Shown here: one piece after another, positions 59,818-63,275 of the stretch
Numbering within the stretch: position 1 is the stretch's first letter
How the letters are laid out: each line of letters opens with the position of its first letter
Assembly: GCA_964270895.1 (NCBI GenBank)
Contig: OZ185436.1
DNA from: Podarcis filfolensis
Lineage: Eukaryota
DNA length: 64,000 bases
Direction: 5' to 3' (one strand)
Translations under genes and position numbers: made by a program
The notes under the pieces: generated by a model
What the model was told of the DNA's origin: nothing
The model's input: only the letters and a program-made list of their open reading frames with translations
Databases searched by the model: none

Positions 59818-59878
59818 ATTGATTCCAATTTTGGTGAATGGAATGAAGTATTCTGAAATTGACATCATATTGTTAAAG
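59818..59878 (+). CDS. TNPO2: TNPO2 coding exon 9 (LIPILVNGMKYSEIDIILLK)
   Basis: 61 nt, AG/GT boundaries. Confidence 0.96.
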
Positions 59879-60602
59879 GTATTTGTTTCCAAACTTAGGA
59901 TTTAATATAATATATATTTCCGCCTTCTTCTGGGTTTTACATTCCTCAGCCGCAACCTCTTTACTGAGCATAACAAATGAAAAGGATTTGTTGTATCCTT
60001 TTCATTTGTTGTAACATCTAGAATCTAGAACATCTAGATGTGTTGTAACATCTAGAATCTCATTCCTCTTTACCCCACTCTTGCTGCTGACCATCCTTAC
60101 AGGCACAGTGCATGGCACTATGGTTGGCAAATCTTCCACAACAAGGAAACTTTGCCCTTTCTTTCAGTTCTGAAGCCTCATTCCATAAGGCTGTAAATTA
60201 TTCCTTGTCCTATTCCTAAAATTGAGCATACCAAGAGACTGCCCATCCCCTTCATATGTAGTTGGCATTTTAAATGTACTACTTCTGTTCTACTGAAGCT
60301 GGGTCTGTGGTGCTGGGGGCTTTCACTGGAACTCCTGCAAGTTCCATCATGAGCCGCACCTATATGCTAACTGAATAGCTATGTCTTTATAAGAAAAGTT
60401 CTTCCTAAGATTACAGACTAGGGTTATGGGCTTGATCAGCTGAGTTAAAACACTTTTTCTGAGTTTCTTGGCTGCAAAAACCCCCTGGTGACTTTAACTA
60501 TGTTTTGCCCCATTTAGTATAAGTCAGGGCCAGTCTAACTTTTCAAGCAAAATTTATACATGCTTGCACCCTCCCAAGTCAGTGGCCAAGCACATGCATT
60601 CT

Positions 60603-60669
60603 TGGAAATGATGCATAACCTTCAGCCTGACAACTGTGATGGGTTGTTGTATTCGTCCTGTCTGATCCA
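60603..60669 (+). ncRNA. SNORD41-like C/D-box snoRNA paralogue with a variant guide
   Basis: C box ATGATGC 60608-14, D' CTGA 60627-30, C' GTGATGG 60636-42, guide TGTATTCGTCCTG, D box CTGA 60662-65, terminal stem TGGA/TCCA extendable to about 13 bp. Confidence 0.75.
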
Positions 60670-60862
60670 TGGATGCATGATGTGAAGAGTCCCAAGAAGA
60701 CTGGAGGGTTACCGTTCTTTGCCAGGGTTTATTTCGGCATTAAGTAACAACCTATCCCACCAAGAACAAGAAATACTGTACTGTTTTGCAAGAGCTCATT
60801 TCCCTGGCAGACGAGACTCAGTATTAAATGGGCTTCCATGTGCTCCCTCTACTCAATTTCAG

Positions 60863-61031
60863 GGTGATGTGGAAGAGGATGAAGCCATCCCTGACAGTGA
60901 GCAGGATATCAAGCCTCGTTTCCACAAATCACGCACGGTTACCCTGCAGCATGAGGAGGAACGGCTACAAGATGACGAAGATGGAGAGGATGAGGATGAT
61001 GACGATGACACGCTATCTGACTGGAATCTGA
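60863..61031 (+). CDS. TNPO2: TNPO2 coding exon 10, acidic H8 loop ([24 protein letters not shown]...[12 protein letters not shown])
   Basis: 169 nt, AG/GT boundaries. Confidence 0.96.
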
Positions 61032-61708
61032 GTGAGTAGGGGAAGAGTTGTGCAGTGCTATTGAGATGGGAAAGTGCCAACTATGAGGGTGCCAGGAGCC
61101 AGTAGAGTGGAGCACTGGGCATTTAACTGACTTGATACCATTCCTTTTCATTTGTGATGGTATGGGGCAAATGCCTCTGAGTACCAATTGCTGGGAATCG
61201 CAGGTGGGCAAAGTGTTTATGTCCTGCTTGTAGGCTGTCCTCAAGCATCTGGTTGGCCACTGTGAGAACAGGATGTTGGACAAGATGGGCCATTGGCCTG
61301 ATTCTTTAGACTCTTACGTGGGAAGAAGATACACGCCGAAGGAGCTTATTCAATGGCCCAATTTTATTTCTTGTTAAAAAGATAGTTCTTGTTTAATAGA
61401 GTTGCTGGAGTTGCACAGCTTGGGGTTTTCTTACCCCTAAAAGATACTTTCTGCCTTGCATGTTTATCCTAAAGCAAGTGCTTTTTTCCTGCTTGTCTCT
61501 TCCTTAAAAGACTCTTTGTTCCCACAGAGTTTACTCTGTGCAATGCATAGGGAGTCACTTTATGCTGGAGAGCGGGCTCAAATAGCAGCCAAGGCTCCAC
61601 ACACCAGATTTGTCAGTCATCTCTGCCTTATGACCATCTGTAGCATAAGGAGGAAGGAAATCCAGCTGGGAGCTCCTGAGTGGAACCAATTGTGCCCCAA
61701 AGCAGTGA

Positions 61709-62047
<339 letters not shown>

Positions 62048-62148: not shown

Positions 62149-62397
<249 letters not shown>

Positions 62398-62789: not shown

Positions 62790-62860
62790 CTGGATGTGAT
62801 GAAGAACTTGAAATTTGAGCTCTGCTGTGATAGTTCATATATTCGTACTGTCTGACCCAG
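62790..62860 (+). ncRNA. SNORD41: SNORD41 (U41) C/D-box snoRNA
   Basis: C box GTGATGA 62796-802, guide TATTCGTACTG, D box CTGA 62852-55, 9-bp stem TTTCTCTGG/CCAGAGAAA. The guide complements 28S CAGUACGAAUA (recalled), and human SNORD41 is also hosted by TNPO2. Confidence 0.88.
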
Positions 62861-62951
62861 AGAAATTCCCTTATACTTCAGATCAAAGAGTGGCATAGGG
62901 TTATAGTTGACTCTTGTGCAGTGAAACTGATCTCTTAAGTGCCCAGGATAG

Positions 62952-63275
<324 letters not shown>

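What the first reader, a model, noticed from the sequence alone, without database searches (positions are those of the whole stretch)
60594..60678. Second SNORD41-like snoRNA mutated exactly at the methylation-specifying base
Seen: all four boxes and a ~13-bp terminal stem with one mismatch are kept. The guide reads ATTCGTCCTG versus ATTCGTACTG in the copy at 62841. The changed base (C60657 versus A62847) is the fifth nucleotide upstream of box D. Known: that position selects the 2'-O-methylated nucleotide, and a mismatch there blocks methylation. The variant also extends pairing on the far side (TGTATTCG against recalled 28S CGAAUACA). Inference: a non-catalytic decoy or chaperone for the same rRNA site, a guide retargeted to a CAGGACGAAUAC-containing RNA, an early pseudogene, or an assembly error.
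Basis: partly seen in the sequence, partly recalled or inferred. Interest (0 to 1): 0.7.

Follow-up and report, generated by a model that had tools for sequence, protein, structure and literature searches.

The report
Lizard SNORD41 copy with disabled guide
A second copy of a ribosomal-RNA methylation guide (SNORD41) in a wall-lizard TNPO2 intron carries a real, fixed but young change at the one base that selects the nucleotide to be methylated, so it most likely no longer methylates, while an intact sister copy two kilobases downstream can still do the job.

Summary
At 60602-60670 (+) there is a box C/D snoRNA of the SNORD41 type. It scores 38.0 bits, just under Rfam's cut-off of 41. It has all four boxes and a 13-bp external stem, and it has C60657 where the canonical copy (62790-62860, 48.3 bits) has A62847. 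That base is the fifth nucleotide upstream of box D.

- **Not an error or a private allele.** Contigs of four differently labelled organisms and three further relatives' contigs (92-96% identical) all carry C.
- **Derived and young.** Ten orthologous copies from other sauropsid contigs, in the same TNPO2 intron, all carry A.
- **An old, formerly constrained copy.** Between deep squamate lineages it is the only alignable island of the intron, and its external stem covaries.
- **Absent in mammals at this place.** In two non-human mammals the orthologous intron is about 100 nt and empty.
- **The "extended pairing" base is ancestral**, not a compensation.

Best reading (about 0.6): a redundant paralogue that recently lost methylation-guiding ability and is probably still transcribed. 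The downstream copy covers the 28S site. A selected non-methylating binder and a retargeted guide are not excluded. This is ordinary snoRNA turnover and a neat natural experiment. The scan has not noted this on other DNA.

The parts
60593..60679 (+). Upstream SNORD41-type box C/D snoRNA with its external stem (5' arm 60593-60606, 3' arm 60666-60679)
   Evidence: Fold. Stem covariation across 10 orthologues.
60602..60670 (+). Rfam SNORD41 match, 38.0 bits (gathering score 41)
60608..60614 (+). Box C, AUGAUGC. The final C in place of A is shared by all four squamate lineages sampled.
60627..60630 (+). Box D' CUGA. The D' antisense stretch 60615-60626 is not conserved between lineages.
60636..60642 (+). 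Box C' GUGAUGG
60647..60661 (+). D guide (positions 15 to 1 upstream of box D), antisense to the 28S site of SNORD41
60657..60657 (+). Fifth nucleotide upstream of box D (N+5). C here and in close relatives, A in ten other sauropsid orthologues and in every downstream copy seen.
60662..60665 (+). Box D CUGA
59879..60862 (+). Host intron of TNPO2, between the exon ending ...DIILLK and the exon starting GDVEEDE. The snoRNA ends 192 nt before the 3' splice site.
60863..61031 (+). TNPO2 exon Ea
   Evidence: Spliced RNA contig with GT..AG joints. Translation.
62790..62860 (+). Downstream canonical SNORD41 copy (A62847 at N+5, box D 62852-62855), in the intron between exons Ec (62169-62394) and Ed (63054-)

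Best explanation
The element is the wall-lizard orthologue of an old, sauropsid-wide second SNORD41 gene. That gene lies in the TNPO2 intron just upstream of the GDVEEDE exon. The canonical-looking copy lies three introns downstream.

Both copies are antisense to the same 28S rRNA site, the one methylated as Um4276 in human.

In the lineage of the window species one substitution, A to C, became fixed at the fifth nucleotide upstream of box D. That nucleotide must form a Watson-Crick pair with the target for fibrillarin to methylate it. The upstream copy should therefore no longer direct the methylation (inferred). The downstream copy still has A and can serve the site (inferred), which would have let the loss go to fixation.

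The boxes, the external stem and the rest of the guide are still intact, and RNA from the region is present. It is probably still made and packaged. This is a very early stage of functional loss, not a long-dead pseudogene.
For: **Identity.**
- SNORD41 match over the whole model.
- Same intron, same strand and the same architecture as the orthologues: L003 (48.1 bits), L004, L012, L001, L002, L005, L007, L008, L009, L013 (48.1 bits) and L019.

**Old and constrained.**
- Between the window, the L005 group, L013 and L019, the intron aligns only at the snoRNA: 85-99 nt at 82-86% identity.
- External stem: 82.7% of cells paired against 40-49% when the partner is slid, and 9 of 15 pairs have changes on both sides.

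**Derived and young.**
- N+5 is C only in the window and L016-L018. It is A in ten other upstream copies and in all three downstream copies.

**Fixed.**
- Four organism labels and three further contigs carry C.

**Effect.**
- A Watson-Crick pair at N+5 is reported as essential for methylation (PMC6009581). Box-D-proximal mismatches strongly impair it (PMC4063771 citing Cavaille and Bachellerie).

**Redundancy.**
- The downstream copy has an intact guide and passes the Rfam cut-off.
- Upstream guides vary in other squamates too. L013 and L019 have G to A at position 7 and the L005 group has G to A at position 13.

**Still transcribed.**
- Run X15 holds spliced TNPO2 contigs, so it is RNA. It has a 156-nt contig at depth 10.9 over 60579-60725, while the adjacent intron bins read 0.35 to 5.8.
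Against: - No direct evidence that the mature snoRNA accumulates or binds fibrillarin or NOP58. Contigs cannot show RNA ends or levels.
- No methylation data for the lizard 28S site.
- Since the mutation arose, no box, stem pair or core guide base has been damaged in any relative seen. Changes lie at 60622, 60626, a one-G deletion in the run 60641-60643, 60646 and 60669 (A to G, which keeps a G.U pair). That fits continuing constraint as well as too little elapsed time.
- The mutant guide is predicted to bind the site about as well as the working downstream copy (-14.6 kcal/mol for both). It could therefore still do something there.
That the target is U is inferred from the A kept by the downstream copy and by all other species.
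Confidence: 0.6

Rival explanations
1. Selected non-methylating binder. The snoRNP still pairs with the 28S site (3 bp, a mismatch, then about 10 bp) without methylating it. It would act as a folding chaperone, or as a competitor that tunes how many ribosomes carry the methyl group.
For: - Boxes, stem and 13 of 14 guide positions are intact.
- Predicted duplex energy equals that of the downstream copy.
- Conserved N+5 mismatches with a presumed chaperone role are described in archaeal sRNAs and are supported by yeast cross-linking (PMC6009581).
- RNA from the region is present.
Against: - The mismatch is not conserved. It is confined to close relatives (3-8% divergence), and ten other lineages keep A.
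- Within that group the snoRNA changes about as fast as the intron: 4 events in 85 nt against about 4.7 expected (my rough count).
- Nothing shows a phenotype or a change in methylation level.
Confidence: 0.15
2. Retargeted guide. The C now pairs with a G in another RNA that contains roughly CAGGACGAAUAC, and directs its 2'-O-methylation.
For: One substitution at N+5 is the minimal change that would shift specificity. The snoRNA is otherwise intact.
Against: - No candidate target was found. The 64-kb window holds no complementary site beyond chance.
- The rest of the guide is unchanged from the rRNA-directed ancestor, so a 12-nt match elsewhere would be a coincidence.
- No lizard rRNA, snRNA or transcriptome could be searched here.
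Confidence: 0.08
3. Already a dead pseudogene. The non-consensus box C (AUGAUGC), the long distance to the splice site (192 nt) and the guide mutation mean that no stable snoRNP is made.
For: - Rfam score below the cut-off.
- The last base of box C departs from consensus.
- The distance to the 3' splice site is 192 nt, against 69-74 nt in L003, L004 and L012.
Against: - The AUGAUGC/GUGAUGC box C is shared by four deeply split squamate lineages in which the snoRNA is the only conserved part of the intron. That box variant is therefore evidently functional.
- The working downstream copy sits just as far (193 nt) from its splice site.
- A long external stem is kept.
- An RNA contig covers exactly this island.
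Confidence: 0.1
4. The mismatch is tolerated and the copy still methylates the U at reduced efficiency.
For: Some human guides with internal A-C or U-U mismatches still serve fully methylated sites (PMC5027482).
Against: Those tolerated mismatches are not at N+5. A Watson-Crick pair at N+5 is reported as essential in vivo and in vitro (PMC6009581).
Confidence: 0.05
5. Sequencing or assembly error, or a private allele.
For: None found.
Against: The C is present in contigs of four organism labels from several studies and in L016-L018.
Confidence: 0.01

Closest known systems
SNORD41 (U41, Rfam RF00588), the TNPO2-hosted box C/D guide for 28S Um4276
   Same: Same host gene, box order, length and 3' guide sequence apart from one base. 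The orthologous copies in L003 and L013 pass the Rfam cut-off at 48.1 bits.
   Different: - The window copy scores 38.0 bits, below the cut-off of 41.
- Box C ends in C.
- N+5 is C, so the defining target pair cannot form.
- It lies in a different intron from the window's canonical copy.
Human SNORD41B (snoSeeker prediction, the same as ZL2 in PAR-CLIP of snoRNP proteins)
   Same: A second U41 isoform in another TNPO2 intron, predicted to guide 28S Um4276 through a 14-nt 3' guide and detected with snoRNP core proteins (PMC1636440; PMC4053766). It shows that TNPO2 carrying two SNORD41 genes is a known arrangement.
   Different: - Probably not the orthologue. In two non-human mammals the intron that holds the lizard copy is only 96 and 106 nt long and empty.
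- SNORD41B keeps full complementarity.
- I did not fetch human DNA, so I could not place SNORD41 or SNORD41B in their introns.
Archaeal C/D sRNAs with a mismatch at the N+5 position (for example the Pyrobaculum sR33 D' guide, a C:U mismatch)
   Same: A credible guide-target duplex with a mismatch exactly at the methylation position, read as binding without modification (PMC6009581). That paper also lists cases where only one family member has the mismatch.
   Different: In sR33 the mismatch is conserved in all six species, which is the argument for function. Here it is young and lineage-restricted, and an intact paralogue exists.

Membership tests
SNORD41 (RF00588) | Covariance-model score at or above the gathering score (41 bits) | tested here: not met
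   38.0 bits for 60602-60670. Orthologues L003 and L013 score 48.1, L004 and L012 score 42.5, and the window's downstream copy scores 48.3.
SNORD41 (RF00588) | Box C, D', C' and D in order, with a terminal stem | tested here: met
   Box C is AUGAUGC, a variant shared by all squamate orthologues. The stem covaries.
SNORD41 (RF00588) | 3' guide antisense to the 28S site, with the fifth nucleotide upstream of box D pairing with the methylated U | tested here: not met
   The guide is identical to canonical copies at positions 2-4 and 6-12, but position 5 is C, which gives a C.U mismatch. That the target is U is inferred from the other copies. The lizard 28S itself was not available.
SNORD41 (RF00588) | Located in an intron of TNPO2, on the sense strand | tested here: met
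   Exons defined by a spliced RNA contig and by translation. Relatives of the exon peptide are named transportin-2 by a source.
SNORD41 (RF00588) | Descent from a copy that meets the family definition | tested here: met
   Alignment A4 of 13 upstream copies, all in the same intron.
SNORD41 (RF00588) | Stable RNA bound by fibrillarin, NOP56, NOP58 and 15.5K | tested here: inconclusive
   Only a 156-nt RNA contig over 60579-60725 at depth 10.9 in one run. There are no raw reads and no CLIP data.
Non-methylating (N+5 mismatch) C/D guides | Mismatch at N+5 conserved across species within a conserved guide-target duplex | tested here: not met
   The mismatch is shared only by close relatives at 3-8% divergence. 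Ten other orthologues have the Watson-Crick A.
Non-methylating (N+5 mismatch) C/D guides | Physical interaction with the target without modification | not testable with these tools
   Needs CLASH or PARIS data and RiboMeth-seq.

The most novel reading that the evidence does not exclude
Wall lizards have turned one of two redundant SNORD41 genes into a non-methylating snoRNP. It would still dock on the 28S site with about the same predicted stability as the active copy, and would either lower the fraction of ribosomes methylated there or assist folding. That would be a naturally evolved antagonist or chaperone made by a single base change at N+5.
Probability: 0.12. Interest if true: 0.6.

Novelty: new member of a known kind. 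Interest (0 to 1): 0.3.

Why it matters
The locus shows a known process at an unusually early and clean stage. Two guides serve one rRNA site. One of them has lost the single base that licenses catalysis, while its boxes, its stem and the rest of its guide remain intact.

That makes it a natural control for two questions. Does an N+5 mismatch abolish methylation in a vertebrate in vivo? Does a catalytically dead guide compete with its active paralogue? Both could be answered by comparing methylation stoichiometry at one site between wall lizards and squamates that keep the A.

It also documents a second SNORD41 gene in the sauropsid TNPO2 intron upstream of the GDVEEDE exon. I did not find that gene described, and mammals lack it at that place.

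Tried and rejected
- **Human SNORD41B as the orthologue: rejected as unlikely.** Two non-human mammal contigs (L011, L020) have an empty intron of 96 and 106 nt at this place. Which human intron holds SNORD41 or SNORD41B stays open. I did not fetch the mammal-type hits P0009, P0010, P0012, P0041, P0051, P0054, P0060 and P0062, because some could be human. L011 and L020 were chosen because their coding sequence differs from the other mammal-type hits, and they were used only to measure the intron.
- **Anamniote origin: no support.** Two fish- or amphibian-type tnpo2 contigs (L014, L015) have no SNORD41 match at E up to 1. That is a sample of two, so it is no proof of absence.
- **Alternative target inside the window: none beyond chance**.
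- **D' guide as the real functional element: rejected.** The D' antisense stretch is not conserved among orthologues.
- **Rate test for constraint since the mutation: no power.** About 4 events in 85 nt against about 4.7 expected (my count).
- **Literature.** The original Cavaille and Bachellerie 1998 paper is not held, so it is cited second-hand. The chicken snoRNA survey lists no U41 or TNPO2 entry. One search only hit a grant number.
- **Not done.**
  - The TNPO2 exons were searched singly by reference.
  - The large representative protein search was not used.
  - The lizard 28S could not be read with these tools. The three target bases beyond the guide complement used come from memory.

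Full report
**What is there**

The window's + strand carries TNPO2 from about 49153.

A spliced contig in run X15, with GT..AG joints, fixes four exons:
- Ea, 60863-61031
- Eb, 61872-62022
- Ec, 62169-62394
- Ed, from 63054

Translation gives transportin peptides: [14 protein letters not shown]..., [14 protein letters not shown]..., [12 protein letters not shown]..., [11 protein letters not shown].... The preceding exon...[20 protein letters not shown], ends at 59878.

Rfam finds one SNORD41 at gathering level, at 62790-62860 with 48.3 bits, in the intron between Ec and Ed. A permissive scan finds a second full-length SNORD41 match at 60602-60670. It scores 38.0 bits, below the cut-off of 41, and lies in the intron before Ea.

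The candidate has these parts:
- box C, AUGAUGC, at 60608-60614
- box D', CUGA, at 60627-60630
- box C', GUGAUGG, at 60636-60642
- box D, CUGA, at 60662-60665

The fifth base upstream of box D is C60657. In the other copy it is A62847. The fold gives a 13-bp external stem, 60593-60606 with 60666-60679, around one U.U mismatch. The two copies are only about 74% alike over the aligned stretch, so this is not a recent duplicate.

**The C is real and fixed**

Contigs of three DNA runs and one RNA run, from four organism labels, cover the place and list no difference at 60657.
- All five differences of the X2 contig are listed and lie elsewhere.
- For X4 two differences, and for X14 six, are not listed. 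I judge that a difference at 60657 would have been shown, because it would be as well supported as its listed neighbours.

Three more contigs were read directly. L016-L018 are 92-96.5% identical to the window and have ATTCGTCCTG.

**Where it comes from**

I searched exon Ea alone, by reference, against the protein collection. I then fetched the contigs behind the exon-sized hits.

Every sauropsid-type contig has a SNORD41-type snoRNA in the same intron, just upstream of Ea:
- L003 (48.1 bits), L004, L012, L001 and L002. These have GC-rich introns and are not squamate-like.
- L005, L007, L008 and L009, which form one group.
- L013 (48.1 bits) and L019.

L004 and L012 also hold the downstream copy between Ec and Ed. 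The two-copy arrangement is therefore old in sauropsids.

In alignment A4 the N+5 column is C only in the window, L016 and L018. It is A in the ten others. All three downstream copies also have A. The C is therefore derived and young.

The L005 group is the one that changed it.

**It was a constrained gene until recently**

Between the window lineage, the L005 group, L013 and L019, the intron is unalignable except for an island of 85-99 nt at 82-86% identity. That island is the snoRNA.

The external stem covaries:
- 82.7% of cells are paired, against 40-49% when the partner is slid.
- 9 of 15 pairs have changes on both sides.
- No shuffle out of 500 reaches the observed covariation score.

The non-consensus box C ending in C is shared by all four squamate lineages, so it is not a recent defect.

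The snoRNA lies 69-74 nt from the 3' splice site in L003, L004 and L012, for both copies where both are present. In the window it lies 192 nt away (upstream copy) and 193 nt away (downstream copy). By established knowledge of intronic box C/D processing, 70-80 nt is the optimum and long external stems compensate for worse positions. That fits the long stem here. This last point is inference.

**Mammals and anamniotes**

In two non-human mammal contigs the orthologous intron is 96 nt (L011) and 106 nt (L020) and holds no snoRNA.

Human TNPO2 is reported to host SNORD41 plus a predicted isoform, SNORD41B, with a 14-nt guide to 28S Um4276, conserved in mouse, rat, dog and cow (PMC1636440). SNORD41B was later recovered as ZL2 in PAR-CLIP of snoRNP proteins (PMC4053766). 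That second mammalian copy must lie in another intron.

I did not fetch human DNA, or mammal contigs that might be human, so the naming of the sauropsid copies relative to SNORD41 and SNORD41B stays open.

Two anamniote-type tnpo2 contigs (L014, L015) gave no SNORD41 match.

**What the change does**

[quoted passage not shown] Mismatches near box D strongly impair it (PMC4063771 on the work of Cavaille and Bachellerie). Internal mismatches that are tolerated in human guides lie elsewhere (PMC5027482).

A C.U mismatch at N+5 should therefore stop this copy from methylating the site. This is inferred, not measured. The downstream copy keeps an 11-bp perfect guide.

Predicted duplex energies:

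| Guide | kcal/mol |
|---|---|
| Window upstream copy (C) | -14.6 |
| Same guide with A at N+5 | -19.3 |
| Window downstream copy | -14.6 |

The target was taken as the complement of the canonical guide plus three bases that I recalled from 28S. Those three bases are not tool-derived. On these figures the mutant could still dock on the site.

**Is it still made?**

Run X15 is RNA, because it holds the spliced TNPO2 contig. It has a separate 156-nt contig at depth 10.9 over 60579-60725. The intron bins beside it read 0.35 to 5.8. The canonical copy is covered only by a 334-nt contig at depth 3.2 that runs on into the next exon.

This suggests that the island is protected in RNA. Contigs cannot show ends or levels, so it stays weak evidence.

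**Constraint since the mutation**

Among the close relatives these changes fall inside the snoRNA:
- 60622 and 60626, in the D' antisense stretch
- the loss of one G from the run 60641-60643, which leaves UGAUGG intact
- 60646, guide position 16, beyond the duplex
- 60669, A to G, which keeps a G.U pair

No box or core guide base is hit. The number of changes is about what the intron rate predicts: roughly 4 against 4.7 in 85 nt, by my count. The data therefore cannot separate neutral drift from continued selection.

Other squamate lineages also tolerate guide changes. L013 and L019 share G to A at position 7. This hints at somewhat relaxed constraint on the upstream guide in general.

**Verdict**

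It is a new, unannotated member of the SNORD41 family with a young, lineage-restricted, fixed substitution at the catalytically decisive guide position.

| Reading | My estimate |
|---|---|
| Recent loss of guide function in a redundant paralogue that is still expressed | 0.6 |
| Selected non-methylating binder | 0.15 |
| Already a dead pseudogene | 0.1 |
| Retargeted guide | 0.08 |
| Mismatch tolerated | 0.05 |
| Sequencing or assembly error | 0.01 |

Noticed in passing
window 61240-61305: A short high-copy repeat, SINE-like. Thousands of contigs from every run pile up here (summed depth up to about 10^6) and the DNA contigs break at it.
   Followed up: no
L013:629-697 and L019:about 620-704: Two deeply diverged squamate contigs share G to A at guide position 7 (AUUCAUACUG). 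That gives an A.C mismatch two bases from the methylation site in an otherwise well conserved snoRNA (48.1 bits in L013).
   Followed up: partly
window 60670-60862 and 62860-63053; L003, L004, L012: Both lizard SNORD41 copies end 192-193 nt before their 3' splice sites. Both copies in the compact GC-rich sauropsid genes end 69-74 nt before theirs. In L005 the distance is about 319 nt.
   Followed up: partly
L011:838-933; L020:465-570: In two non-human mammals the TNPO2 intron that hosts the sauropsid upstream SNORD41 copy is only 96 and 106 nt long and has no snoRNA.
   Followed up: yes
L004:1451-1517: The upstream copy in this contig has GGGAUGA where its relatives have GUGAUGA in box C. The U of UGAUGA is replaced, yet it still scores 42.5 bits.
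   Followed up: no
L014, L015: Fish- or amphibian-type tnpo2 contigs (3.4 and 7.5 kb, L015 spanning the Ea to Ed region) have no SNORD41-like element at E up to 1.
   Followed up: partly
window 60394-60567 (-) and 60712-60828 (+): Weak sub-threshold Rfam matches: TUSC7 at 22 bits against a cut-off of 65, and SCARNA23 at 15.5 bits against 60. I take them as chance.
   Followed up: no
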